Shown here piece after piece: positions 2 through 64,000 of a DNA stretch of 64,000 bases. The stretch lies in IMG/VR virus record IMGVR_UViG_3300050821_009835, positions 200,913 to 264,912 of that record. The stretch is one strand, 5' to 3'. Position 1 is the stretch's first letter, and the number at the start of each line of letters is the position of its first letter. Both the position numbers and the translations under genes were made by a program. The notes beneath the pieces are model-generated. The model was given only the letters and a program-made list of their open reading frames with translations. It made no database searches and had not been told where the DNA came from.

Positions 2-781
2 GGCAGTTCCAATGAATGTGAACGTCGTTTGCAGGAGCATTTGCATGATTTACGATTGGGAAAACACGAAAATCCCTATCTTCAAAATGCTTGGAACAAA
101 CATGGGGAGGAGAATTTTCTGTTTGAAATTCTAGAGGTGGTGAAAGACAAGATTTGGCTACGAGCTAGAGAGCAGGCTGGGTTCTCTCGTTTTCATAGTT
201 GTGACCCTAAATTTGGTTTCAATATCTCAAAAGACGCTTGGTGGGCTAGTGTAAATCATGATCCGGAGACGCTAAAAAGAAAAACTGAAAAACTTCGACA
301 ATATTTGAACCTTCCGGAAGTTAAAGCAAAACGGTCAAAGTTGATGAAAGATGTTTGTAATCGTCCTGGTCAACGAGAGAAATTGCAAGCAGCGGGAAAA
401 TTGACAGCGAAGCCTTTTGAGCTAATAGATCCTAAAGGGAAGAGATTTTCTGGAGTTAATTTAAAGGCATTTTGTTTAGCAAACAACTTGGTTTACACAA
501 AAATGTGTGGAGTTAATAACGGAGAGTTTGCCTATTCTGGTTGGAAATACCCTTCATTTAATGAAGAAATTCATAAATTAGAGATTTCCAGAATTCGTTC
601 AAAAGCAGGCATCAAGCGGTACCAGAACCCAAAAGAGCGGGAGAGAGTAGCAAAAAACTCAACCAATTGGCACCATAACCCCAATACTCTAGAAGCTAGA
701 AAACTTCGTGGATTACACATTAGTCAAAGCAAAAAGGGGAAGAAATTCAATAGAACCTCAGCCTCGGGAGTCGCTGCCTAA
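2..781 (+). CDS. GIY-YIG homing endonuclease, 5'-truncated by the window edge
   Basis: Frame is open from base 2 (GSSNECERRLQEHLHDLRLGKHENPYLQNAWNKHGEENFLFEILE), the typical GIY-YIG helix region, with a basic DNA-binding C-terminus. Stop overlaps the next ATG. Confidence 0.85.
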   Translation, partial: GSSNECERRLQEHLHDLRLGKHENPYLQNAWNKHGEENFLFEILEVVKDKIWLRAREQAGFSRFHSCDPKFGFNISKDAWWASVNHDPETLKRKTEKLRQYLNLPEVKAKRSKLMKDVCNRPGQREKLQAAGKLTAKPFELIDPKGKRFSGVNLKAFCLANNLVYTKMCGVNNGEFAYSGWKYPSFNEEIHKLEISRIRSKAGIKRYQNPKERERVAKNSTNWHHNPNTLEARKLRGLHISQSKKGKKFNRTSASGVAA

Positions 782-3699
782 TGTCATCTCTTCCATCCAA
801 TCTCGCAGCAGTTGAACTTTGGCCGATTCGGGCGAAAGGCGCAGTCACACGCCTCAGCCCGTTTTCTGATCCAGCTATCACACAATTTTATCAGAAATCA
901 ATTGAAGAAGGTCGACTCCTCGAAAACTCCATTGCGGATGCGAATGATCAACTTCTGAAGAGGAAACAGCAGCTCTATGACTTGATTACGAATTACGCGC
1001 ACATGCAGAGCATCGGCGTAAACGGCCAGCTCAAGTATACACCTCGTGTAATCAAACTTGCTAATGATGTTGTCCAGATTATCAATGTCATCACGACGAT
1101 TCAGGGTGAACTGCGGGGGGTGTTGGGCGCTTTAACTCAAAACCTTACCATACTTGCATCTATTGAGCGTTCTCTTTTACAGGAAGTTCAAACAACGCTC
1201 AACTCGTTAGCTAATCTTCTTCAAAACATCTGTAATTGGGGCTTGCCTTCACTCCCTTCACTCCCCAATCTATTTCCTGATGGTCTCTGGAACTGGCAGG
1301 GTTTCAACTTTTCTCCCTTGTTCAACTTGAGTCAGTTGTTTAAACCCAATCTCCCGAACTTATCGGCGTTTTCTCAATTTTCGTTTAGTCAGTGTTCTCT
1401 AATGAATCTAGGACTTGTCAATAACCCGAGCACTAACAATCCTCTTCAGATCACAGGCTACAGCGGCAACACTTTGGGTACTCCTCCCACTATACTCCCG
1501 GCTCCGTTGAATGGTTTGATTCTTAATTCCCCAACGCAGGCGCAGTTGAATCAAACTGTAACTCCTGTATACAGTGCCACGACATTTAATCCCAATACGA
1601 GTATGATAGGCAGTCTGCCAGACCCCTCCACCATTTTGAGCGATTATCAGATGCCGAGTGCCACGTATCAATCCAACATTTTAAGTTTGATCCCGGCTAC
1701 ACTCAACCAAGTCATTGAGCCGACAGACGCAGACTATACCAATCCCAATTATGGTGTTCGCAACCCATTGGAAGTGAAGTCACTTGCAACTAGTATCACA
1801 CTTGGGGAAGTGGTGGCTTCAAACTATGACCCTTATATAGTGTCTGCTTGGTTGTTCTACCTCAGTCTCAATTTTACGGGTCGTGCTGGTCTTTGGCTCC
1901 CGAATTTTGCTCAACTATACAGCGCAGTTATCCTCCCATCTCTAACCTCGCTTTCTCAAAATGCAGTGCCTTTTAACAACTTCACGGGTACTGTGGTCGA
2001 TACACCCACAGATATTCCACTTACTGATCTATTGAAGAATCTATCCCCCGGCTTGCTTCAAAACATGCTTTGGAAATTATCGTATATCGAAGCTTCATTG
2101 CTTGGTTACACAAGAAATAAAACCTGGGATTCGGGCGCGGATACATTGTTTACGGCTAGTTTTACGAGTGTAGATCTCGATTACGAGGTAACCCTAATCA
2201 GTGCCGAGGTTACAACTTTGATTTTGGGCCAGACCACGGCTCAATATCCTGTCCCTTGCACATTTCCATCTTCACTTACAACAGTGCTCAATGAAGTTAT
2301 CACGATCGCCACGGCTGATATCAACGCTACGTCAAACTATTTGTCCCCGCACCCACAGTATCGATATGTCTACAATCAGTTTGCTCAAGCAACTGTAGTT
2401 GATCGTTTTTCGCAATTCTGGCGCGAGTTTAACAGCAATCTTATTGTATTCTTGAGCATGGACCCCTACGTTGTACAGCGCGTGGCTTCGTACCCGCAGA
2501 CCTTAGATGGAGTGCTGAATCCTTTGGCGAACACGGTTGATATCGCCGCTTATAATCAAGTATTGAGTGATAGTCTAACTCGTAATAGATCCTGGATTCC
2601 TGGTTCTGATCTTTTGACGCTCCCCATAGCCCCAGTTGTGGCATTCAGCAATACAACTACCCCTCCAAACACAGGATGGAGTGGAACCACTTTTAATAGT
2701 CAAGCATACCTAAATCGCCCGGATATTCAGGCTTTACCCATCCCAACACAAATGGCCATGCTCCGTACGAATATCAGCTACGCGGGCATTATGCAATTTT
2801 CTCAAAATCTTCAGGCTGAAATTCAAACGCAGATGAACAGCATAAATGCTGCACTAGCTCAGATCAGTACTCTGGGTTTCTACACCAGTGACGTCACTGC
2901 GGTAACAGGAGTCGGGGAGACACCCACGCCGATAGAGTTCGATTCTATCACTGCCCCAAACGATTTTGATTTAACGGGATATACCGCCATCCCTCCAGGG
3001 ACAACATTCACGATTCAGAATTCAGGAGTGTTTTCTATTACAGGTCAACTCAACTGGAGCGGCGGAGGGCCAGGAACGTATACGATTCAGATTACTCAAA
3101 ATGGAGGAGTTGTTTTTCAATCGGAACCTATGGTTGGGAGTGGCACTTTCACCCAGCAGTTCGTATCAAATGGGGGTTTCAATCAAGGTGATGAGATTCA
3201 AGTTCTCGCGTACACTACAGCTACGGGTTCAGGCAGCCCCCCAAATATCTTCGTGGGGTCAGGTAGTTTTTTCAGCATGATTTTGTCCATCCCCACTCCC
3301 GGCCTACCACCTGGGCCAATTCCCCCAGTATCTCAGTTGGGTGCCACTAAGACCTTTACAGCTGATGGAAATTTTCCGATAGGAACTGCTGTTAGGGTTG
3401 ACTCCAGTGGCAACGTAGTTGCCGTGGATCCTACAATTGGTAAGCCTGGTCCTCCAGTTCCTTACGTGGATGGGATTGCAACTTCAATTGGAGTTGCGGG
3501 TCAGCCTGTGGATGTCATTGTTAGCTATGGAAGCTACGTTCAAGTTTCTGGCTTACCAGCTTTTACTGTAGGGCAGGGCATCTACGTTGGAATAAGCGGT
3601 TTGGTGACTCAACCCAATCCCAATTTGACTTGGACGATATATGTTGGAATAGCTCTTTCCGACAATACCTTTCTCTTCGAACCCCACATTCCCCAGTAA
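781..3699 (+). CDS. Large virion structural protein with C1q-like and capsid-cement-like C-terminal modules
   Basis: 972 aa, S/T/N/P/L-rich. PIEFD..DFD....FTIQNSGVFSITGQLNW resembles C1q/TNF-like jelly rolls. The final TFTADGNFPIGTAVRVD...GIATS..AGQPVDV resembles cement/DUF2190-like beta modules. Confidence 0.55.
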   Translation: MSSLPSNLAAVELWPIRAKGAVTRLSPFSDPAITQFYQKSIEEGRLLENSIADANDQLLKRKQQLYDLITNYAHMQSIGVNGQLKYTPRVIKLANDVVQIINVITTIQGELRGVLGALTQNLTILASIERSLLQEVQTTLNSLANLLQNICNWGLPSLPSLPNLFPDGLWNWQGFNFSPLFNLSQLFKPNLPNLSAFSQFSFSQCSLMNLGLVNNPSTNNPLQITGYSGNTLGTPPTILPAPLNGLILNSPTQAQLNQTVTPVYSATTFNPNTSMIGSLPDPSTILSDYQMPSATYQSNILSLIPATLNQVIEPTDADYTNPNYGVRNPLEVKSLATSITLGEVVASNYDPYIVSAWLFYLSLNFTGRAGLWLPNFAQLYSAVILPSLTSLSQNAVPFNNFTGTVVDTPTDIPLTDLLKNLSPGLLQNMLWKLSYIEASLLGYTRNKTWDSGADTLFTASFTSVDLDYEVTLISAEVTTLILGQTTAQYPVPCTFPSSLTTVLNEVITIATADINATSNYLSPHPQYRYVYNQFAQATVVDRFSQFWREFNSNLIVFLSMDPYVVQRVASYPQTLDGVLNPLANTVDIAAYNQVLSDSLTRNRSWIPGSDLLTLPIAPVVAFSNTTTPPNTGWSGTTFNSQAYLNRPDIQALPIPTQMAMLRTNISYAGIMQFSQNLQAEIQTQMNSINAALAQISTLGFYTSDVTAVTGVGETPTPIEFDSITAPNDFDLTGYTAIPPGTTFTIQNSGVFSITGQLNWSGGGPGTYTIQITQNGGVVFQSEPMVGSGTFTQQFVSNGGFNQGDEIQVLAYTTATGSGSPPNIFVGSGSFFSMILSIPTPGLPPGPIPPVSQLGATKTFTADGNFPIGTAVRVDSSGNVVAVDPTIGKPGPPVPYVDGIATSIGVAGQPVDVIVSYGSYVQVSGLPAFTVGQGIYVGISGLVTQPNPNLTWTIYVGIALSDNTFLFEPHIPQ

Positions 3700-6885: not shown

Positions 6886-7940
6886 CGTCCGGGCAATCGC
6901 GGCGAAGTTCGAGGCCGCCAGGCAAAAGCGTCGTGGGTAATTTACTGTCTCGAAGTCTGTTTCGCGAGGATGTTTTTAATCGCGACCGCTACAAGTGTGT
7001 CAATTGCGGAATGCCTGGTCAAGATGCTCATCACATTCTAGAACGAAGACTTTGGCCTGACGGCGGTTACCACCTTGACAATGGAGCTACAGTTTGTGGT
7101 ACTTGTCACTTAGAAGCTGAAGCGACGTTGATATCTTGCGACACGCTACGCCATAAAGCCGGAATTTCCCGAGTGATTCTTCCACCCCATTTTTATCCAG
7201 ACCAAGAATACGATAAGTGGGGCAACCCAATACTGCCCAATGGCCAGCGCCTTCGTGGAGAATTATTCGAAGATGCATCTGTTCAGAAAGTCCTTGCTCC
7301 TGTATTGCATCTTTTTACAAATCGAGTCAAGTACCCGCGCACTTGGCATTTGCCCTGGTCACCCGGAGCGACCTCTTACGATCGGATTCTAGCAACAACT
7401 GATCACTGGCGAGGTAAACAAGTAGTTATAACAGAGAAGATGGACGGGGAGAACACAACCCTTTACAAAGACTACGTACATGCAAGGTCTCTAGATTACA
7501 GTCCTCATCCTAGTCGCGACAGAGTTAAGGCATTGTGGGGATCCATACAATCAGATATTCCCGACAACTATCGGGTATGCGCCGAGAACGTTACTGCCAC
7601 GCATTCCATCGCGTATAGCAATCTTCCATCGGTTCTTTTAGTATTCAGCATTTGGGATGGTTTAACTTGTCTCAGTTGGAAAGAGACAGTGGAGTGGTGC
7701 GATTTGTTGGGGTTACGAACAGTTCCTGCACTCTATTGCGGAATGTATGAACCAGGTATGTGCCAGGAACTCTGCAAGCAGCTAGATACGGAGAAGCAGG
7801 AAGGGCTTGTTGTGCGACCCGATGGACAATTCCACATGAGAGAATTTTCTGATGTCGTGGGCAAATATGTCCGCTCAAATCACGTACAGACGCACGGTCA
7901 CTGGATGCGTCAGAAACTGGAGTTTAACAAATGCGTTTAG
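6873..7940 (+). CDS. HNH endonuclease domain fused to ATP-dependent RNA ligase
   Basis: N-terminal RDRYKCVNC...DAHHI...GY.LDNGATVC..CH (HNH). C-terminal KYPRTWHLPWSPG, EKMDGEN, EGLVVR and KYVR ligase motifs. True start may be slightly downstream. Confidence 0.85.
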   Translation: MAGITSGQSRRSSRPPGKSVVGNLLSRSLFREDVFNRDRYKCVNCGMPGQDAHHILERRLWPDGGYHLDNGATVCGTCHLEAEATLISCDTLRHKAGISRVILPPHFYPDQEYDKWGNPILPNGQRLRGELFEDASVQKVLAPVLHLFTNRVKYPRTWHLPWSPGATSYDRILATTDHWRGKQVVITEKMDGENTTLYKDYVHARSLDYSPHPSRDRVKALWGSIQSDIPDNYRVCAENVTATHSIAYSNLPSVLLVFSIWDGLTCLSWKETVEWCDLLGLRTVPALYCGMYEPGMCQELCKQLDTEKQEGLVVRPDGQFHMREFSDVVGKYVRSNHVQTHGHWMRQKLEFNKCV

Positions 7941-8832: not shown

Positions 8833-10404
8833 ATGAAAAAACTCCTCAGCAATTTTTTCTTGGTGATTTTGCTTGCTTCAGCAAGTTTAGCCCAGATTCA
8901 GTCTAGTTTCTTTGGTATGAATCAATCTCATTCCATTGTTTGCCCAAATACTCCACTCAGTTTACAGTATCCGTTGTACGGAGTAAATGCAGCACTTAGA
9001 GATTGGAATTTATGCACTACTCAGTGGGCAGACATAAATTCTGCTAATGGTGTGTACAATTTCGCAAGTCTAGATGGTCTTTTGGCAGGAGCAAAGTCAA
9101 AAAACGTAGATGTGTACATCACGCTAGGAGCTACCCCCAACTGGATATCCTCCAAACCAACAGACACTGCTTGCGACAGAGCCAACAGCTTCGGTCAACC
9201 TGCCGGAATGTGCGATCCTCCTTCCGATATAAACCCAGATGGTACGGGTACGGATACAGCTTGGAGAGCATTCATTACCGCACTAGTTACTCATGTAAGC
9301 ACCAGTAGCTATCTTCAGACGCATGCTCATATCATGTTTTACGAAATTTGGTCTGAGTTTTCTCGTTCAGATAGCATAGGGACCGCAACTTGCAATGCCA
9401 CAGGACCTACCTGTAGCTACCGGGGGACATTCGCCCAGATGCTCAGAATGACGCAAGATTTAAGATGCATAGTAGAAGGTTTTCCAAATGATCCAATCAC
9501 GGCGTTAAATACCACCTGCGGTAACGATAAAACCATGCCAGTAAGAGGGTTAGATCCAACAGCTAGAATAGCAGAAGGTGACGCTGGTGACACTCCTCTG
9601 GATAACGGTAACATTGTCATGCAGAACTATCTGTACTGCAATAATAATCCTCCAGTAAACAGCCAATGTAACTATGGATCTGCGGGAAGTGCAGCGACAG
9701 ATATAATCGACGGTCATCCCTACTTTACCAGCCACGTCCCAGAAGCCCTAATTCCCGTACTTGCAGACATGATCTCCCGCCTGTCATTGACAGATCAAGC
9801 TAAACTTCGATTTGCCAGCGAAGGATCGTGGGGACAGAATTCAACTGTAAATGACCCTATGCTTCAAGCCGCGTATGTCCCAAGATGGTTTGCTGTTTTA
9901 TTGATACAAAAGTTTGACAGAGGATACTGGTGGTCGTGGGACGGTGCTGGTGCTGGGGGAAATGGGGGTTTGTGGAACTCGGTTTCCATGACTTTTCCTC
10001 CCAATCAGTGCAACACAATTGATCCTGTAGTAGGAGGATATGATTGCACAGGTGGGACGGCATTTAGAACTACTATACAGTGGTTTGTTGGAAATACGGT
10101 AACAGGAATAACCTGCCCCACTAGTTGCAGCAACCCAACGTTGGGCGTCTATACCATGACATTCACAGGGGTCAACGGTCAGACGTTTGTCATGGTGTGG
10201 GATAGTTCTCAAACCTCTCCTTGCAGCAATCCCATGTGTGGGCAAACCCCGCTTCCTACATTACCATTTCAAGCAGCAAATTGGCAGGATGTTTTAGGAA
10301 ATAACTATAGCGGGCAGCCAAAAACAATTGGCGCGAGTCCCATTTGGTTAGTAAAGGGAACTGGACCGCTGGCACCACAAAATCTAGGAGCAATCGTAAA
10401 TTAA
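8833..10404 (+). CDS. Secreted clan-A glycoside hydrolase (GH39-like)
   Basis: Signal peptide MKKLLSNFFLVILLASASLA; SFFGM, WADINSANGVYNFASLD, TPNW, YEIWSE, HPY, FASEGSW, RGYWWSWD. Confidence 0.75.
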   Translation: MKKLLSNFFLVILLASASLAQIQSSFFGMNQSHSIVCPNTPLSLQYPLYGVNAALRDWNLCTTQWADINSANGVYNFASLDGLLAGAKSKNVDVYITLGATPNWISSKPTDTACDRANSFGQPAGMCDPPSDINPDGTGTDTAWRAFITALVTHVSTSSYLQTHAHIMFYEIWSEFSRSDSIGTATCNATGPTCSYRGTFAQMLRMTQDLRCIVEGFPNDPITALNTTCGNDKTMPVRGLDPTARIAEGDAGDTPLDNGNIVMQNYLYCNNNPPVNSQCNYGSAGSAATDIIDGHPYFTSHVPEALIPVLADMISRLSLTDQAKLRFASEGSWGQNSTVNDPMLQAAYVPRWFAVLLIQKFDRGYWWSWDGAGAGGNGGLWNSVSMTFPPNQCNTIDPVVGGYDCTGGTAFRTTIQWFVGNTVTGITCPTSCSNPTLGVYTMTFTGVNGQTFVMVWDSSQTSPCSNPMCGQTPLPTLPFQAANWQDVLGNNYSGQPKTIGASPIWLVKGTGPLAPQNLGAIVN

Positions 10405-35853: not shown

Positions 35854-35930
35854 CCACGAGTAGCTCAGTTGGTAGCAGCAATTGGCCGATAACCGATAGG
35901 TCGCAGGTTCGATCCCTGCCTCGTGGACCA
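35854..35930 (+). tRNA. trnI: tRNA-Ile(GAU), CCA encoded, C at position 33
   Basis: Acceptor CCACGAG/CTCGTGG; anticodon arm ATTGG-CCGATAA-CCGAT; T-loop TTCGATC; ACCA end. Confidence 0.9.
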
Positions 35931-36017
35931 AAATTTTAATGGAGGCCAAATATGGCTGAAGAAAAGGAACAGCACGAGGAGTATCCGATGAACGGGCCTT
36001 GTTGCTAGAGGAATTTT

Positions 36018-36099
36018 GCTAGGATGGCTCAGCGGCGACAGCAGCAGTTTCGTACACTGCCATACAAACACAGGGGTTCGAGTCCCCTTCCTAGCTCCA
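36018..36099 (+). tRNA. trnT: tRNA-Thr(CGU), 11-nt variable region, CCA encoded
   Basis: Acceptor GCTAGGA/TCCTAGC; arm GCAGT-TTCGTAC-ACTGC; variable CATACAAACAC; T-arm AGGGG-TTCGAGT-CCCCT. Confidence 0.85.
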
Positions 36100-36104
36100 A
36101 GTTT

Positions 36105-36177
36105 GCAGATGTAACACAATTGGCAGTGTACTTCCTTGGTAAGGAAGAGGTTGTGGGTTCGACTCCCATCGTCTGCT
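36105..36177 (+). tRNA. trnT: tRNA-Thr(GGU), no encoded CCA
   Basis: Acceptor GCAGATG/CGTCTGC; arm CTTCC-TTGGTAA-GGAAG; T-loop TTCGACT. Confidence 0.9.
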
Positions 36178-36215
36178 CTTTCGTGACTTTCTTTAAGAAA
36201 GGTTCATGACGAATT

Positions 36216-36395
36216 ATGAATAACGGGTGCCCATGTAGCAGCTGTCATCCATACGGTGCAGCTTATTGTTGGTGTTTTCTCCACAGACTAGAGCACCCGT
36301 TAGTAGAGAAGATTATCAATGCGGAGAGCTGGCGTGAAACCAGCCAATTGATGAATGAACTTTACACGACGTATTTGAGTCGTTTAGGAAGATAA
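36216..36395 (+). CDS. 59-aa Cys-rich protein inside the tRNA cluster
   Basis: MNNGCPCSSCHPYGAAYCWCFLH...; AAGAAAGG upstream. Confidence 0.5.
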   Translation: MNNGCPCSSCHPYGAAYCWCFLHRLEHPLVEKIINAESWRETSQLMNELYTTYLSRLGR

Positions 36396-36399
36396 GTTT

Positions 36400-36485
36400 G
36401 CTGGTATCGCATAGTGGCCGATTGCAGCAGTTTTGTAAACTGCCGGAGAAATCCCACGGGGGTCCAAATCCCTCTGCCAGCTCCA
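36400..36485 (+). tRNA. trnT: tRNA-Thr(UGU), long variable arm, atypical T-loop, CCA encoded
   Basis: Acceptor GCTGGTA/TGCCAGC; arm GCAGT-TTTGTAA-ACTGC; variable CGGAGAAATCCCAC; T-loop TCCAAAT. Confidence 0.85.
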
Positions 36486-36492
36486 AAATTTT

Positions 36493-36579
36493 AGGGCGGT
36501 CGGGTAATGGCATCCCACCTGACTTTGAATCAGACGAGCCTTCGGCTCATTGTAGGTTCGAATCCTACCCGCCCTGCCA
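36493..36579 (+). tRNA. trnQ: tRNA-Gln(UUG), long variable arm, CCA encoded
   Basis: Acceptor AGGGCGG/CCGCCCT, G73; loop CTTTGAA; variable CGAGCCTTCGGCTCATT; T-arm GTAGG-TTCGAAT-CCTAC. Confidence 0.85.
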
Positions 36580-60004: not shown

Positions 60005-60373
60005 ATGGGTGATAGATTTATTGGGTGGCTTGAAAAAACGGGTCATGATATAGAAAGTGCTTCTGTTAGATCTCTCCCTTACATAGCTACAGCAGGAGAG
60101 GCCACTGTTACTTTATTTTTACCAAGTGCAGCCCCTGCTATCAATTCGACCATCAATACAATTATCGCTACTGAACAAAAATACACCGCACTTGGAAGAC
60201 AGACTGGGAGTGGTGAGGAGAAGTTGGCCGATGTTATTGGGATCACTGGCCCCGCAATTGAGAAGCTTCTTCAGACTGCTGGAAAACCCAATACTTCTGC
60301 TGATGTTGCTAACGTGGTCAATTCATTAGTGACAATCATGAATTTAACTCCAACCGCCTCTACAAAAGCGTAA
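60005..60373 (+). CDS. Hypothetical protein, weakly holin-like
   Basis: GGGAG RBS; G.G.EKL motif with a hydrophobic mid-segment. Confidence 0.4.
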   Translation: MGDRFIGWLEKTGHDIESASVRSLPYIATAGEATVTLFLPSAAPAINSTINTIIATEQKYTALGRQTGSGEEKLADVIGITGPAIEKLLQTAGKPNTSADVANVVNSLVTIMNLTPTASTKA

Positions 60374-60376
60374 ATT

Positions 60377-61168
60377 ATGAAAAGGGTACTACTAGCCACT
60401 AAAATAGGTTGTCCCGTTATTTTAACGGTGGCAATTTGCCTTTTCCTTTGGCGAGCAGATAGAGCTTATCATCAGTTTCTTGGCGGTGTAACTCTTGCTC
60501 CTATCGCAAAAAACATCAATGATAGTATAGGAACAATCCCAAAGGTAACTGATGCTTTTTCAACCGCTGTTAATAATGCTTCAGCGGCGGCTTCAAATCT
60601 TAGTGCAGTAATTGCGGATGAACATAAATCGCAAACAGTGCAGAATAAAGAGTTAACAAAGATCATGGGAGAAGCTCGAGTCGCAATTACTCGAACTGAT
60701 TGTAACTTCAATGGTGGACCTGGATATGAGGGTGGCCCGCCCTGTGTGGGACTTCTACCCACTGTTCAAGAAACATTTAATCAACTCAAGCTTAGTCTCG
60801 AAGAAGTTGATAAGCTGACGGAAGCAGGGACATCTTTAGCTAATTCGGGAACAGCAGCAGTAAACTCGTTGAATTTAAGGATTTCTGACCCCAAGATTGA
60901 TTCAATCTTGGCGCACACAGATATGTTTATGCTCCATGCTCAAAACTCAGCAGATAATGTTGATATATTTACGCAACACGGCGACCACATCATTAGTTAC
61001 TTTGACGAACGTCTAACATCCCCAAGAGGCTTTATCAAAACGCTGGGTGCAGGACTTTTGGGTTTGGTGGTACCTGTAGCCAATTCATACTCAGCTTGGG
61101 GTAAACCGACTGCTGTAGTTAACACATTAACAGTTAAGAAACATTCGAAGGGAAAATCTGTTAAATAG
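60377..61168 (+). CDS. Membrane-anchored coiled-coil protein (spanin- or MCE-like candidate)
   Basis: N-terminal TM segment, long heptad region, two Cys. Confidence 0.4.
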   Translation: MKRVLLATKIGCPVILTVAICLFLWRADRAYHQFLGGVTLAPIAKNINDSIGTIPKVTDAFSTAVNNASAAASNLSAVIADEHKSQTVQNKELTKIMGEARVAITRTDCNFNGGPGYEGGPPCVGLLPTVQETFNQLKLSLEEVDKLTEAGTSLANSGTAAVNSLNLRISDPKIDSILAHTDMFMLHAQNSADNVDIFTQHGDHIISYFDERLTSPRGFIKTLGAGLLGLVVPVANSYSAWGKPTAVVNTLTVKKHSKGKSVK

Positions 61169-61173
61169 GGAAT

Positions 61174-61938
61174 TTACGTTAAAATACTAGCGGTGTTATA
61201 GCGAATACTGGGCTCAAGTTCTGAGAACGGTTTATTCCAGCGTAGGGCAGAACCTTTGCGACCTAACCAAGAGCGGTACTCATCCGTCATTAGAGCACTA
61301 ATTTTACGTAAATTAGCAGCCGTGTTGGGATGAGCGGATTTACCTTTTTGAGTCTCTGAACGTGCTTGTCTTACTTCTAGCGGAATTTCTCTACCTCGAA
61401 GTTTCTTGGCTCGTTTCTCTATCCACTCTGGGGATTGTTTTCTGCCGCGAGTTTTCTTACCCTGCGCTTCATAGGATGCTCGATTTCTAAGTAGTCCTCT
61501 AGCTTTTCTCTTTTTCCAACCAGCACGTAGGGATTCTTTGTGTGCTTCTGACAACGGTATACCAGTTAGAGCCTTGGAAACATTAGCATTCCATTCTGAA
61601 GTTCTCCAACGAATTACAGGTGGAATAGCTGCATAAGGATTATCGTTGTAGCAATGATCTCCCCAATGAGCATTGATAGCAAGTTGCTCATTATGTCTCA
61701 GTTCTTTCTTAATAGGTGAGCAATGGATGATTGGTTCAAATTCAAAAGCAGATTCTCCATATTTATTCCAATCAGCCTGAAGCCTTAAGTTATGATGGAC
61801 CCCTTTTCTAAGTTCCGCTAAGTGTTCTTTAAACCATCTTCGTTGAAAATTTTTAGAGCTTCCAACGTACACCCAATCTACTGCTGTACAACGAATGAGA
61901 TACACTCCACTATTTAGAATTGGAATATCTGTATACAT
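61174..61938 (-). CDS. GIY-YIG homing endonuclease with NUMOD3 repeats
   Basis: SGVYLIRC...VYVGSS.NFQRRW..H...L..G.HHN..LQ.DWNKYG; LSEAHKESL, QSPEWIEKR. Confidence 0.92.
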   Translation of the reverse strand: MYTDIPILNSGVYLIRCTAVDWVYVGSSKNFQRRWFKEHLAELRKGVHHNLRLQADWNKYGESAFEFEPIIHCSPIKKELRHNEQLAINAHWGDHCYNDNPYAAIPPVIRWRTSEWNANVSKALTGIPLSEAHKESLRAGWKKRKARGLLRNRASYEAQGKKTRGRKQSPEWIEKRAKKLRGREIPLEVRQARSETQKGKSAHPNTAANLRKISALMTDEYRSWLGRKGSALRWNKPFSELEPSIRYNTASILT

Positions 61939-62036
61939 ATCTATCTTGGGTTAGAAAGTCGCAATATCGCTAATTAAAAACGATCGCAAGATTTTTCCCA
62001 TTAAAGTAGGGTCGTTACCCTTTAAGGAGCTAACTT

Positions 62037-62905
62037 ATGTCACAACTTGGCTTAATAGCTAGGCCAAGAAAAATCTCTTCTGATTGACTTGAACCCTGAA
62101 ATGGGAACAAGGCGGAACCCGTAAAAGGGACCGTGAGAGACTAAGCGAAGAGACTCCGAAAAGGAGATGCGATAGTCCGCTCTCATGGGAATTATAAACC
62201 ATGAGAGGTAGGCAGAAATGCCCTACCCTCGTTCAAAGAGCGAGTAACAAAAAGGATATTTATCGTCAAGGTACCTCGGCACAGACTGAAACAGTTGTAA
62301 GCAGCCGATTTACTATTTTCAGCCCCGCTGTGGATGTGGGCAAATTCGTGAAATTGGGCGTGACTTCATCCTTCACGATCACAGAATCTAAGACCGTTGA
62401 TGCAGTACGCGGCCTTGGTTACGGTGATATCATCGCAGAATTAGTGCCTGGTGTCACTCAACCGATGACACTGGCGATCACTCGTACAGCTCTCTATCTA
62501 GCTAACCTCATGCAGATGATGGGTTATAAGGCGGGAGTATCGGGTGCTGTTCGTTCACTCAAACATCACAAGTGGCCCTTTGATATTCGTACTGAAATTG
62601 TTTTCTCGCAGATCGCTTCAGAAGACCCGAATATCCAGAATGCTACTTTAGCAGATATCCCGAATGAAGGCGGTTTAAACAATACGGGCAATCCTGGTCT
62701 ATATGCGGTTGCAACCGTATACGAAGGCTGCTGGATGGAGAACTACAACACAGGGTACCAGATTGAACAGGCCGCCGTGACTGAAGACTGCTCCGTTGTT
62801 GTTACAGACGTTTTCGACGTGGCTGGTAGTGTCTATGGTGAATTTATTGACAGTGGTAACAATACTGGCGATGCTACTGGTCGCTCTCTAATCTTCACCA
62901 CCTAA
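62037..62905 (+). CDS. Tail tube protein, spliced: join(62037..62052,62256..62905)
   Basis: AAGGAG RBS, ATG 62037. Spliced N-terminus MSQLGYIYRQGTSAQTETVVSSRF; tube-like VGV..SF..TESK.VD.VRGLGYGD.IAELVPG..PM.L.I.R. Confidence 0.85.
62053..62255 (+). ncRNA. ORF-less group I intron, 203 nt
   Basis: P1 CTTGGCT/GGCCAAG with U.G at the 5' splice site; P3 TCTCTTC/GAAGAGA; P4-P5 CTTG..CCC-TGAAAT-GGG..CAAG; P6 GCGG/CCGT; P7 G-A-GACTA/TAGTCC; P8 CTCC-GAAAA-GGAG; P9 TCTCATGG/CCATGAGA; terminal G; splicing restores the frame. Confidence 0.93.
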
Positions 62906-62911
62906 CAATCT

Positions 62912-62940
62912 AGGCGAAGGCATTTAAAATGCCTTCGCCT
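62912..62940. terminator. Perfect long hairpin after the tube gene (terminator or stabilising stem)
   Basis: AGGCGAAGGCATTT-A-AAATGCCTTCGCCT; no strong U-tract. Confidence 0.55.
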
Positions 62941-62957
62941 CATTAAGGTTGCCCGAA

Positions 62958-64000
62958 ATGAACACCTTGACGAATAACCCTGAAGACAGAGTGCCTATAA
63001 ATGAAGCTGGTTTCAAAAAACCACTTAGACAAAAGAAAGGCAATGGTTATCCTTTTGGAGAATCGGAACTTCGATTGGTGCCAGTTTCTTCTTTATACCC
63101 AACTCAAGAGATTGTAATTTCTTCAATAGTGAGTAAACACATGAACTCTCTTGAAACAAGGCCTCCAGAAGTTGTGGACACGAATGGAAAACTTCTTGTA
63201 GCTGATGGTCATCATCGGATTGCTGCTGCGATAGCTAAAGGAGACAAAAATATCTTGGTATCTGTATTTCCCAAGTGGGGGGCTAAAGGAAGTACTGAAG
63301 GTTGGGGTGAAGTAAGAACTTGGAAGATAAATAAAGCTAACGCTAACGCTAACGATAGTCCACTTCTACAACATCATAAGACCAAAGTTGCACTAGACGC
63401 ACTCCTTGAAATGTATGCTGACCCCACTCGTGCTACTGAGACGGGCGATTGGCACGCTGACCCTGACTATGATGATCCACTCGCCATGAAGGGGACAGAA
63501 CCTGAAAACGTGAAGTACGGCGACGCACCCCTTCCCGCTCAGAAAACAGATGGAGTAGATCCAACATTGAATCCTGAAGACAAAATCTTCAAACGCAGTA
63601 AACCCGCAGCGGATCTCTCAATGGTCATTTCTGCCGCTGGCGGACGGAGTTTTATGTACAAACATTTCAAAGATGCGCATACTGCTCACGCTCATCTTGT
63701 AGAGACAGCGCGTTACTATCATGTTGCTGACTTCGGTCAAATTTGGGCTTGGGCGGAGAAGAATTTTCCTGTTAAAGAAGCTGTAGTCGAACAGAAATTA
63801 ACTCCTAAGATGTTACCTCAGCGCGATGATATGCGCGGACATTTGGATGAGGATGTTAAAGACGAGATAAATGAGATAGTGGATGCTCCTGTAATGCAAG
63901 GTGCGAAAGGTGTGCATATCGGGGCGTCGCAAGCAGAAATTTTGAAGGCGTTTGACCATCTTCTGAATCTTTTGTATGGTACAAGTCCAAATGAACTTAG
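62958..64000 (+). CDS. ParB/Srx-like N-terminal domain fused to a low-complexity region, runs off the window (not in ORF track)
   Basis: Frame open from ATG 62958 to the window end; VPVSSLYPTQ...PPEVV....LLVADGHHRIAAA. Confidence 0.75.
   Translation, partial: MNTLTNNPEDRVPINEAGFKKPLRQKKGNGYPFGESELRLVPVSSLYPTQEIVISSIVSKHMNSLETRPPEVVDTNGKLLVADGHHRIAAAIAKGDKNILVSVFPKWGAKGSTEGWGEVRTWKINKANANANDSPLLQHHKTKVALDALLEMYADPTRATETGDWHADPDYDDPLAMKGTEPENVKYGDAPLPAQKTDGVDPTLNPEDKIFKRSKPAADLSMVISAAGGRSFMYKHFKDAHTAHAHLVETARYYHVADFGQIWAWAEKNFPVKEAVVEQKLTPKMLPQRDDMRGHLDEDVKDEINEIVDAPVMQGAKGVHIGASQAEILKAFDHLLNLLYGTSPNEL

What the first reader, a model, noticed from the sequence alone, without database searches (positions are those of the whole stretch)
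61174..62255. Freestanding GIY-YIG gene head-to-head with the ORF-less intron: candidate collaborative homing pair
Seen: the endonuclease start (61938, minus strand) is about 115 bp from the intron insertion site (62052/62053), and the intron has no ORF. Known: in collaborative homing (for example cyanophage S-PM2 psbA intron with F-CphI) an adjacent freestanding endonuclease cuts the intron-less allele, the intron gives immunity, and both spread together. Inference: the same arrangement targeting a tail tube gene.
Basis: partly seen in the sequence, partly recalled or inferred. Interest (0 to 1): 0.62.

Follow-up and report, generated by a model that had tools for sequence, protein, structure and literature searches.

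The report
Spliced intron beside free-standing homing endonuclease
A soil giant phage has a small self-splicing intron, seen spliced out in environmental RNA, 16 bases into its tail-tube gene, with a free-standing I-TevI-like endonuclease gene next to it; related phages show the intron only where such an endonuclease sits, so the two probably spread together, a known kind of selfish-DNA partnership.

Summary
A 254-aa GIY-YIG endonuclease gene (61174-61938, minus strand) starts 114 nt from a 203-nt group I intron with no ORF (62053-62255). The intron interrupts a tail-tube-fold gene after its 16th base.

The intron is real:
- A soil metatranscriptome contig joins 62052 directly to 62256.
- The DNA run carries the intron.
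- Eight homologous introns show strong covariation.
- Rfam does not detect it.

I surveyed about 70 distinct tube-gene lineages of related soil jumbo phages.
- Every intron-bearing locus with readable upstream DNA (8 lineages) also has a GIY-YIG gene of this family in the spacer just upstream. It lies on either strand, and one copy is truncated.
- The endonuclease also occurs there without the intron, in at least 8 lineages.
- Most lineages have neither element.

So the intron depends on the endonuclease, but the endonuclease does not depend on the intron.

The best reading is that endonuclease-started gene conversion at the 5' end of the tube gene carries the intron along. This is collaborative homing or trans homing. 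The cut site and any immunity given by the intron were not tested, so the strict form of the model stays open.

This is a new member of a known kind, and it comes with a useful natural series of intermediate states.

The parts
61174..61938 (-). Free-standing GIY-YIG homing endonuclease gene, 254 aa, of the I-TevI-like subfamily. The ORF is intact.
   Evidence: Pfam PF01541 E=3.1e-9. PHROG 314 and 7168 'homing endonuclease'. TIGR01453 above its cut-off. Residues 9-80 align to I-TevI 2-70, including the equivalent of catalytic R27. RNA contigs lie at 61553-61721 and 61725-61886.
61939..61966 (.). Short leader next to the endonuclease start. It is conserved only among lineages that carry the opposite-strand endonuclease, so it is probably part of the endonuclease cassette.
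   Evidence: Comparison by eye of the window, L088 and L090. There is no counterpart in the endonuclease-free relatives L004-L006.
61967..62036 (+). Native upstream region of the tube gene. It holds a conserved block (61967-61997), a hairpin (62008-62021) and the Shine-Dalgarno sequence AAGGAG (62024-62029).
   Evidence: It aligns with the spacer upstream of the tube ATG in the endonuclease-free, intron-free relatives L004, L005 and L006. RNA contigs start at 62021.
62037..62052 (+). Exon 1 of the tail-tube gene (MSQLG plus the first base of a Tyr codon). Its last 6 nt form P1 with the intron's guide sequence.
   Evidence: The RNA joint is at 62052. P1 at 62047-62052 / 62062-62067 has an invariant U.G pair at the splice site and one compensatory pair. 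Database protein P0002 starts MSQLGYIYRQGT.
62053..62255 (+). Group I intron, 203 nt, with no ORF. Helices: P3 62074-79/62148-53; P4 62088-91/62108-11; P5 62094-96/62103-05; P6 62113-15/62131-33; P7 62137,62139-43/62173-78; P8 62154-57/62163-66; P9 62180-88/62199-207; P9.1 62208-12/62222-26; P9.2 62228-31/62241-44. The terminal G is at 62255.
   Evidence: It is skipped exactly in RNA. In 8 homologues, 96.2% of cells are paired against 32-46% when the partners are slid, and 21 pairs change on both sides against 0-4. MFE z-score is -6.6. Rfam gives no match.
62256..62905 (+). Exon 2 of the tail-tube gene. The spliced product is 221 aa.
   Evidence: 631 homologues of about 221-230 aa. 73% identical to Tunturi_5 gp329, annotated 'virion structural protein'. 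AF2 model pLDDT 78. The best PDB fold matches are tail-tube proteins: phage 812, contractile injection systems, monocin and lambda gpV.

Best explanation
The locus holds two selfish elements that most likely move as one unit.

Shown:
- The 203-nt intron is a group I ribozyme that is removed precisely from the tail-tube mRNA, so it does no harm to the phage.
- The neighbouring gene encodes an intact I-TevI-like GIY-YIG endonuclease that lies outside the intron.
- In related phages the intron at this site is found only where an endonuclease of this family occupies the spacer just upstream of the tube gene.

Inferred: during co-infection the endonuclease cuts an endonuclease-free, intron-free tube allele at or near the 5' end of the gene. 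That stretch, encoding GGYIYRQGT, is the only sequence conserved across these lineages on either side of the endonuclease. Repair copies the donor genome across the break. The endonuclease gene and the intron lie about 90-115 nt apart and are converted together.

Two versions remain open. In collaborative homing proper, the cut falls exactly at the insertion site and the intron protects its own genome by splitting the target. In trans homing, the cut falls nearby and the intron only hitch-hikes. The endonuclease also thrives at this site without the intron, so the intron is the dependent partner.
For: Intron reality and in vivo splicing.

Endonuclease identity. RNA contigs lie over it while the intron has zero RNA depth.

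Co-occurrence:
- The three closest endonuclease relatives (61-64% identical: P0128, P0129, P0130) all lie head-to-head with a tube gene that carries the homologous intron at the same site.
- A second clade (P0131-like) lies on the same strand, with the intron in L026, L065, L097 and L109.
- No intron-bearing tube locus with readable upstream DNA lacks the endonuclease. Counts are 7 with the endonuclease and 0 without among intron-bearing lineages, against 9 and 41 among intron-free lineages; Fisher p=4e-5, with the caveats listed under evidence against.

Patchy distribution on the tube tree:
- The window's tube groups at 99% support with the endonuclease-free, intron-free L005/L006, while other carriers sit in other clades.
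- L097 is sister to the empty L024.

Cassette borders:
- Homology to the empty relative L033 resumes exactly at the first base of exon 2 in L090.
- Homology to the empty relative L019 resumes at the tube ATG in L030.

Signs of a conversion tract: there are excess mismatches in the first 60-120 nt of the tube gene between endonuclease carriers and their nearest empty relatives. Pairs of empty relatives do not show this.

Precedents: S-PM2 psbA with F-CphI, T7-like phages, T4 mobE with nrdB, and ICP1 terminase (PMC3984707, PMC2790892, PMC10448857).
Against: - No cleavage data exist, so the target site, the cut position and the immunity of the intron-bearing allele are all inferred.
- The endonuclease occurs at the same spot without the intron in at least 8 lineages (L030/34, L036, L046, L054, L070/71/77, L078, L116, L157). 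The intron is therefore not needed for the endonuclease to spread or to protect itself.
- In the L090 vs L033 pair there is no excess of 5' mismatches. The systematic test rests on only 6 discordant pairs.
- Carriers differ more in the endonuclease (61-64% aa) than in the tube protein (73-77%), so no recent transfer is visible.
- Several intron-bearing loci were found through the endonuclease, which biases the co-occurrence count. Lineages are also not independent.
- The same intron family sits at other sites and in other genes, so it has some means of reaching new sites that this endonuclease cannot explain.
Confidence: 0.6

Rival explanations
1. Strict collaborative homing. The endonuclease recognises a site spanning the exon1/exon2 junction of the intron-less tube gene. 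The intron splits that site and is the genome's immunity device. The two elements are an obligate pair.
For: - The intron lies 16 nt into the only conserved sequence next to the endonuclease.
- Same-strand endonucleases end 7-40 nt before the tube ATG. This fits an I-TevI-like enzyme that binds at the insertion site and cuts about 25 bp upstream (my own knowledge of I-TevI).
- All four lineages of the window's own opposite-strand endonuclease clade carry the intron.
Against: Many carriers of the endonuclease have no intron, so they must be immune by other means. No target-site difference between the classes can be seen by eye. Cleavage is untested.
Confidence: 0.3
2. The elements are independent. 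The endonuclease does ordinary intron-less homing into the spacer upstream of the tube gene. The intron reached the same conserved sequence on its own, for instance by reverse splicing. It is near the endonuclease only because both favour conserved sites in essential genes.
For: - The intron family occurs at a second site in the tube gene (L097) and in other genes (L095, L099, L104, L106), so it can reach new sites.
- The endonuclease is frequent without the intron.
Against: At this site the intron is never seen without the endonuclease or its remnant, in 8 informative lineages across two endonuclease clades and both orientations. At 90-115 nt apart, any break made by the endonuclease near the gene start would co-convert the intron anyway (PMC2790892).
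Confidence: 0.12
3. Endonuclease turnover. The intron once carried its own endonuclease ORF, which was lost. The present free-standing GIY-YIG gene is a later arrival that took over the locus. This is the alternative raised in PMC10448857.
For: - TIGR01453-type enzymes are typically encoded within introns.
- On the endonuclease tree, the intron-bearing same-strand copies are scattered among intron-free ones. This fits replacement of endonucleases beside a persisting intron.
- L109 shows an endonuclease decaying beside an intact intron.
Against: All 14 distinct members of this intron family that I found are 190-210 nt with no ORF or remnant of one. The pattern scans would, however, miss members with large inserts.
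Confidence: 0.1

Closest known systems
Collaborative homing: cyanophage S-PM2 psbA intron with F-CphI; T7-like phages' DNA polymerase intron with a free-standing HNH enzyme (Zeng et al. 2009 and Bonocora & Shub 2009, as reviewed in PMC3984707)
   Same: A group I intron without an ORF sits in a conserved phage gene. A free-standing homing endonuclease gene lies right beside it. The intron and endonuclease co-occur.
   Different: - The endonuclease here is GIY-YIG (I-TevI-like), not Endo VII-like or HNH.
- It lies upstream of the gene, on either strand.
- The target gene is a tail-tube gene of soil jumbo phages.
- Cleavage at the insertion site, the defining step, is not shown.
- Endonuclease-only states are common.
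Trans homing: T4 mobE with the nrdB intron (PMC2790892)
   Same: An adjacent free-standing endonuclease mobilises an intron that cannot move by itself. Success depends on short distance, which here is about 90-115 nt.
   Different: MobE is HNH and nicks away from the insertion site. The nrdB intron carries a defunct endonuclease ORF, whereas this intron has no ORF at all.
Vibrio phage ICP1: T5orf172 endonuclease beside the short N-terminal exon of the terminase gene (PMC10448857)
   Same: The endonuclease gene lies next to a very short first exon rather than inside the intron. The endonuclease sits at a boundary between variable and conserved DNA.
   Different: The endonuclease family, the gene and the phage group all differ.
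Phage Twort orf142 (a tail-tube gene) with three group I introns (cited in PMC11878797)
   Same: Group I introns lie in a myovirus tail-tube gene. The best fold match of the protein here is the tube of the Twort-like phage 812. The relative L097 has two introns in this gene.
   Different: No sequence relation between the introns was tested. I know of no free-standing endonuclease partner reported for Twort orf142.
I-TevI (T4 td intron endonuclease)
   Same: The catalytic domain is homologous, and the protein falls in subfamily TIGR01453.
   Different: I-TevI is encoded inside its intron, whereas this gene lies outside. Only 72 residues align. The DNA-binding part is unassigned: relatives match NUMOD3, but this protein does not at E<=0.01.

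Membership tests
Group I intron | P1 helix between the exon end and the internal guide, with a U.G pair at the 5' splice site | tested here: met
   6-bp P1. U.G in 8/8 homologues. One pair covaries between exon and guide (GC in 7, UA in 1).
Group I intron | Conserved core P3-P9, including the P3/P7 pseudoknot, supported by covariation | tested here: met
   53 pairs, 96.2% of cells paired. 21 pairs change on both sides, against 0-4 when the partners are slid. 0 of 500 shuffles reach this. The MFE fold recovers all nested helices on its own.
Group I intron | Terminal G, and precise excision with exon ligation | tested here: met
   G at 62255. The RNA contig joins 62052 to 62256. L003 is identical across the junction.
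Group I intron | Match to the Rfam group I intron model | tested here: not met
   No hit at the gathering score, nor at E<=10 on 61800-62500. I take this as a lack of model sensitivity, given the other tests.
Group I intron | Protein-free self-splicing that depends on guanosine | not testable with these tools
   Needs an in vitro transcript and GTP.
GIY-YIG homing endonuclease (I-TevI-like, TIGR01453) | GIY-YIG catalytic domain with its motifs | tested here: met
   PF01541 at 37.4 bits, cut-off 22.6. TIGR01453 at 61.9 bits, cut-off 56.05. In the alignment to I-TevI, GVY, YVG and the R27 equivalent line up. The E75 and N90 equivalents are seen by eye only.
GIY-YIG homing endonuclease (I-TevI-like, TIGR01453) | Encoded inside an intron | tested here: not met
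   The ORF lies on the opposite strand, upstream of exon 1. It is free-standing.
GIY-YIG homing endonuclease (I-TevI-like, TIGR01453) | Site-specific cleavage of the allele that lacks it | not testable with these tools
   Needs an enzyme assay.
Collaborative homing pair | Intron without an ORF and free-standing endonuclease within recombination distance | tested here: met
   114 nt from the endonuclease start to the insertion site.
Collaborative homing pair | The two elements are inherited or distributed together | tested here: inconclusive
   The intron always comes with the endonuclease or a remnant (8 lineages). The endonuclease often lacks the intron (at least 8 lineages). The dependence runs one way.
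Collaborative homing pair | [quoted passage not shown] | not testable with these tools
   The evidence is indirect only: cassette borders at the start of the tube gene, and excess 5' divergence.
Phage tail tube protein | Tail-tube fold | tested here: met
   AF2 model pLDDT 78, pTM 0.71. 52 PDB matches at E<=0.001; those listed are tail-tube or tail/injection-system structures. Best is phage 812, E=3.5e-7, TM 0.75 by target.
Phage tail tube protein | Match to a curated tube family | tested here: inconclusive
   The query itself has no Pfam, PHROG or NCBIfam hit. 2 of 70 distant relatives hit PF06841 (T4 gp19) at E=5e-4. The Atlas gives a lead to Phi812_tail_tube.

The most novel reading that the evidence does not exclude
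In these soil jumbo phages, one family of very small group I introns without ORFs may act as a portable partner for free-standing nucleases of several unrelated families. It has colonised at least two sites in the tube gene and two in a major-head-like gene. Each time it lies next to a nuclease gene outside the intron: GIY-YIG here, and in L104 an Endonuclease VII-type ORF and another endonuclease ORF. That would make intron-nuclease collaboration a general, modular strategy and a live source of new mobile introns, rather than a rare accident.
Probability: 0.2. Interest if true: 0.7.

Novelty: new member of a known kind. Interest (0 to 1): 0.45.

Why it matters
Only a few pairs of a free-standing endonuclease and an ORF-less intron are known. 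How such pairs arise is an open question that PMC10448857 raises explicitly.

This phage group shows many of the possible states side by side at one site:
- empty;
- endonuclease only, on either strand;
- endonuclease plus one or two introns;
- a decaying endonuclease beside an intact intron.

Splicing is seen directly in soil RNA. An isolate, Tunturi 5, has an empty site and could serve as a recipient. Together these make the order of events, the target site and the immunity question testable.

There are two practical points. Public gene calls start this tube gene inside the intron, giving 234 aa instead of 221. Rfam also misses this intron family.

Tried and rejected
- Rfam at the gathering score and at E<=10 found no group I intron. 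I set this aside as a false negative once the RNA joint and the covariation were in hand.
- The first AF2 run on 26 close homologues failed, with pLDDT 32. A 70-sequence alignment built from the representative search worked.
- A profile search of the PDB by sequence gave nothing for the tube protein.
- Pfam, PHROGs and NCBIfam gave nothing for the tube protein itself.
- I looked by eye for target-site differences between endonuclease-only, intron-bearing and empty alleles around the insertion site. No clear pattern appeared.
- I looked for a second copy of the intron in the phage's own genome. There is none.
- A scan of bacterial and archaeal genomes for the intron core found 0 matches.
- A second IMG/VR sampling with another query returned mostly the same contigs. 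The 12 new loci hold no intron.
- I tried to resolve the exon borders of the two introns in the major-head-like gene of L104. This was not achieved.
- The sigma-70 promoter and terminator scan of the locus gave nothing above the shuffled level.
- I considered DNA contamination as the source of the RNA joint. I rejected it as less likely, because the RNA runs have zero depth over the intron and over neighbouring genes, and the DNA run lacks the joined form.

Full report
WHERE THE WINDOW LIES. The window is the last 64 kb of a 264,912-bp IMG/VR virus record, linear and about 78% complete. A 340-kb JGI contig carries the same sequence (L007). The nearest isolate is the 309-kb jumbo myovirus Tunturiibacter phage Tunturi_5 from Arctic soil (PMC11924767). 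The runs that hold the sequence are all soil metagenomes or metatranscriptomes.

THE OBSERVATION. ORF 61174-61938 on the minus strand encodes 254 aa.
- It matches Pfam GIY-YIG at E=3.1e-9, above the cut-off.
- It matches PHROG homing-endonuclease families.
- It matches NCBIfam TIGR01453 'group I intron endonuclease' above the cut-off.
- It matches the solved I-TevI catalytic domain at E=4.4e-11. Residues 9-80 align to I-TevI 2-70, and the GIY and YIG motifs and the R27 equivalent line up.

On the plus strand, a strong Shine-Dalgarno sequence (62024-62029) precedes ATG 62037. Reading on without splicing hits a stop after 16 codons (read directly).

THE INTRON IS REAL. Rfam does not find it, neither at the gathering score nor at E<=10. 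Four independent lines show that it is a group I intron.
- Homologues: the 631 homologues of exon 2 are about 221-230 aa. They begin M-x-x-G-G-Y-I-Y-R-Q-G. Tunturi_5 gp329 is uninterrupted.
- A database protein: P0002 (221 aa) is exactly exon 1 plus exon 2. Its 943-bp contig L003 equals window 62021-62052 joined to 62256-63166 at 100% identity.
- RNA: laying public runs on 60900-63400 shows an 821-nt contig in metatranscriptome X2 that skips 62053-62255 with no mismatch. The probable source DNA run X1 is continuous through the intron. The RNA runs have zero depth over 62076-62243.
- Structure: eight homologous introns at the same site support a hand-drawn model of P1, P3-P9, P9.1 and P9.2. In that model 96.2% of cells are paired, against 32-46% with slid partners. 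Twenty-one pairs change on both sides, against 0-4. No shuffle out of 500 reaches this. The U.G pair at the 5' splice site and the terminal G are invariant. The minimum-energy fold recovers every nested helix by itself, with a z-score of -6.6.

Exon 2 was searched by reference. The joined protein used for the alignments and the fold is the database entry P0002.

The intron has no ORF. Gene callers, however, start the tube gene at ATG 62201, which lies inside the intron, giving 234 aa (P0122).

THE INTERRUPTED GENE. No family library names the protein. A first fold on close homologues failed. With 70 diverse relatives from the representative search, the model reached pLDDT 78. Its PDB matches are tail-tube proteins and their kin: phage 812, contractile injection systems, monocin and lambda gpV, with 52 matches at E<=0.001. 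Two distant relatives touch PF06841, the T4 gp19 tube family. The Atlas points to Phi812_tail_tube. 'Tail tube gene' is therefore supported at the level of fold. The gene lies downstream of a 1204-aa ORF of the same length as Tunturi_5's annotated sheath gene.

DISTRIBUTION IN RELATIVES.

The endonuclease has few close relatives: P0128, P0129 and P0130, at 61-64% identity. Wherever DNA could be read, each lies head-to-head with a tube gene that carries a homologous intron of 195-201 nt at the same position (L088, L090-92, L103).

A second clade, P0131-like and 38% identical, lies on the same strand directly upstream of the tube gene.
- It has the intron in L026/L094, L065, L097 and L109.
- In L109 the endonuclease has lost its catalytic N-terminus.
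- It lacks the intron in L030/34, L036, L046, L070/71/77, L078, L116 and L157/159.
- L054 has an opposite-strand copy without the intron.
- L023, L055 and L059/63 hold remnants.

Most of the roughly 70 distinct tube lineages sampled from IMG/VR have neither element. One intron-bearing contig, L098, is too short to judge.

In summary, the intron is never found without the endonuclease, while the endonuclease is often found without the intron. The raw association is 7 and 0 against 9 and 41, Fisher p=4e-5. It is inflated because lineages are related and because some loci were found through the endonuclease. Loci found through the tube gene or through the intron alone (the window itself, L026, L065, L097, L103, L109) show the same result.

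SIGNS OF MOBILITY.
- On the tube tree the carriers are scattered. The window groups at 99% support with the empty L005/L006. The other opposite-strand carriers sit in another clade beside the empty L033. L097 is sister to the empty L024 (a quick tree).
- On the endonuclease tree, intron-bearing same-strand copies are mixed with intron-free ones.
- Borders: in L090 against L033, homology resumes at the first base of exon 2 and about 110 nt beyond the endonuclease stop. In L030 against L019, a 707-nt endonuclease cassette replaces a 37-nt spacer, and homology resumes at the tube ATG.
- In the window, the 70 nt before the ATG (61967-62036) are native tube-gene leader shared with the empty relatives. 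The endonuclease cassette and the intron are therefore two insertions flanking about 85 nt of native DNA.
- Between endonuclease carriers and their nearest empty relatives, the first 60-120 nt of the tube gene are unusually diverged. Mismatches per 60 nt are 19, 11, 6, 5, 2 for L036/L032; 15, 13, 5, 7 for L030/L019; 17, 10, 9, 9 for the window/L005; and 15, 8, 3, 4 for L026/L023. Empty/empty pairs show no such excess. This looks like a conversion tract or target-site escape at the gene's 5' end. One pair (L090/L033) lacks it, and the formal test is small, with 6 discordant pairs and p=0.019.

MECHANISM. The endonuclease family keeps turning up immediately upstream of the tube gene even though the gene further upstream differs among close relatives. 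The conserved 5' end of the tube gene is therefore the likely target. An intron 16 nt into that gene lies within any realistic repair tract, so a break there would carry the endonuclease and the intron together. This is the logic of collaborative homing (a cut at the insertion site) and of trans homing (a cut nearby), as set out in PMC3984707 and PMC2790892.

The data cannot tell which of the two applies, nor whether the intron confers immunity. The many endonuclease-only genomes show that immunity can be had without the intron.

Confidence by claim:
- That the intron's persistence and spread at this site depend on the neighbouring endonuclease: about 0.6.
- The strict collaborative form: about 0.3.

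The rivals are independent arrival of the intron and turnover from a once intron-encoded endonuclease (PMC10448857). Both are less likely but not excluded.

COMPARISON AND NOVELTY. Pairs of a free-standing endonuclease and an intron are known in S-PM2 (psbA with F-CphI), T7-like phages, T4 (mobE with nrdB) and ICP1 (terminase). Introns in a tail-tube gene are known from Twort orf142 (PMC11878797). This case adds several things:
- a GIY-YIG partner;
- a structural-gene target in soil jumbo phages;
- both gene orientations;
- a rich set of intermediate states;
- direct environmental evidence of splicing.

It is a new member of a known kind. It is of moderate interest, mainly as a tractable natural system.

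LIMITS. All RNA and DNA evidence comes from contigs, not raw reads, so strand, transcript ends and rare variants cannot be read. The trees are quick trees.

Noticed in passing
window 62201-62905: Public gene calls (JGI, ENA, Logan) give the tube gene as a 234-aa ORF starting at ATG 62201, which lies inside the intron. The spliced product is 221 aa, so the first 19 residues of the annotated protein are intron read-through.
   Followed up: yes
L097:2849-3322 (IMGVR_UViG_3300032160_000106): This relative has two introns of the same family in the tube gene. One is at the usual site (2849-3055). The second lies about 56 nt downstream, inside the Phe codon of the SSRF motif (about 3112-3322). It recalls the multi-intron tube gene of phage Twort.
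   Followed up: partly
L104:6885-9794 (also L107, L099, L101): The same intron family occurs twice (7592-7779, 8952-9145) in a gene that matches a major head protein PHROG. An endonuclease ORF (phrog_2340) lies on the opposite strand upstream of intron 1. An Endonuclease VII-family ORF (PF02945, the motif used by F-CphI) lies right after intron 2. The exon borders were not resolved.
   Followed up: partly
L109:12800-13679 (IMGVR_UViG_3300029915_000091): The endonuclease beside an intact intron start has lost its GIY-YIG N-terminus. Just upstream, an ORF ends with a zinc-finger and RuvC-III-like motif typical of TnpB (judged by eye only). This may be an insertion sequence that disrupted the endonuclease.
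   Followed up: no
L002:3950-6008 (LR745208, 485-kb uncultured phage): In this distant jumbo phage, a 393-aa GIY-YIG ORF with repeated C-terminal motifs lies directly downstream of the tube homologue rather than upstream.
   Followed up: no
window 2-781 (+) and genome C1:89949-90188 (-): The same phage genome has two further GIY-YIG homing-endonuclease genes. Their neighbours were not examined for split genes.
   Followed up: no
window 60005-61168: The two ORFs upstream of the endonuclease (122 and 263 aa) have no detectable similarity to the single 251-254-aa ORF at the same place in the closest relatives (L004-L006). The endonuclease therefore sits at a boundary between swapped and conserved DNA, as described for nuclease genes in PMC10448857.
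   Followed up: partly
window 62008-62021: A hairpin just before the Shine-Dalgarno sequence is conserved in relatives. The JGI contig L003 and the Logan RNA contig both begin at 62021, right after it. This may be an RNA 5' end or an assembly artefact, and the two contigs may come from the same data set.
   Followed up: no
window 35854-36576: A cluster of five tRNA genes, in keeping with the tRNA-rich genome of the related jumbo phage Tunturi 5.
   Followed up: no
window 62053-62255 and all homologues: Rfam 15 has no model that detects this compact group I intron family (about 195-210 nt, without P2 at this site), even at E<=10. Automated annotation will therefore miss it.
   Followed up: yes
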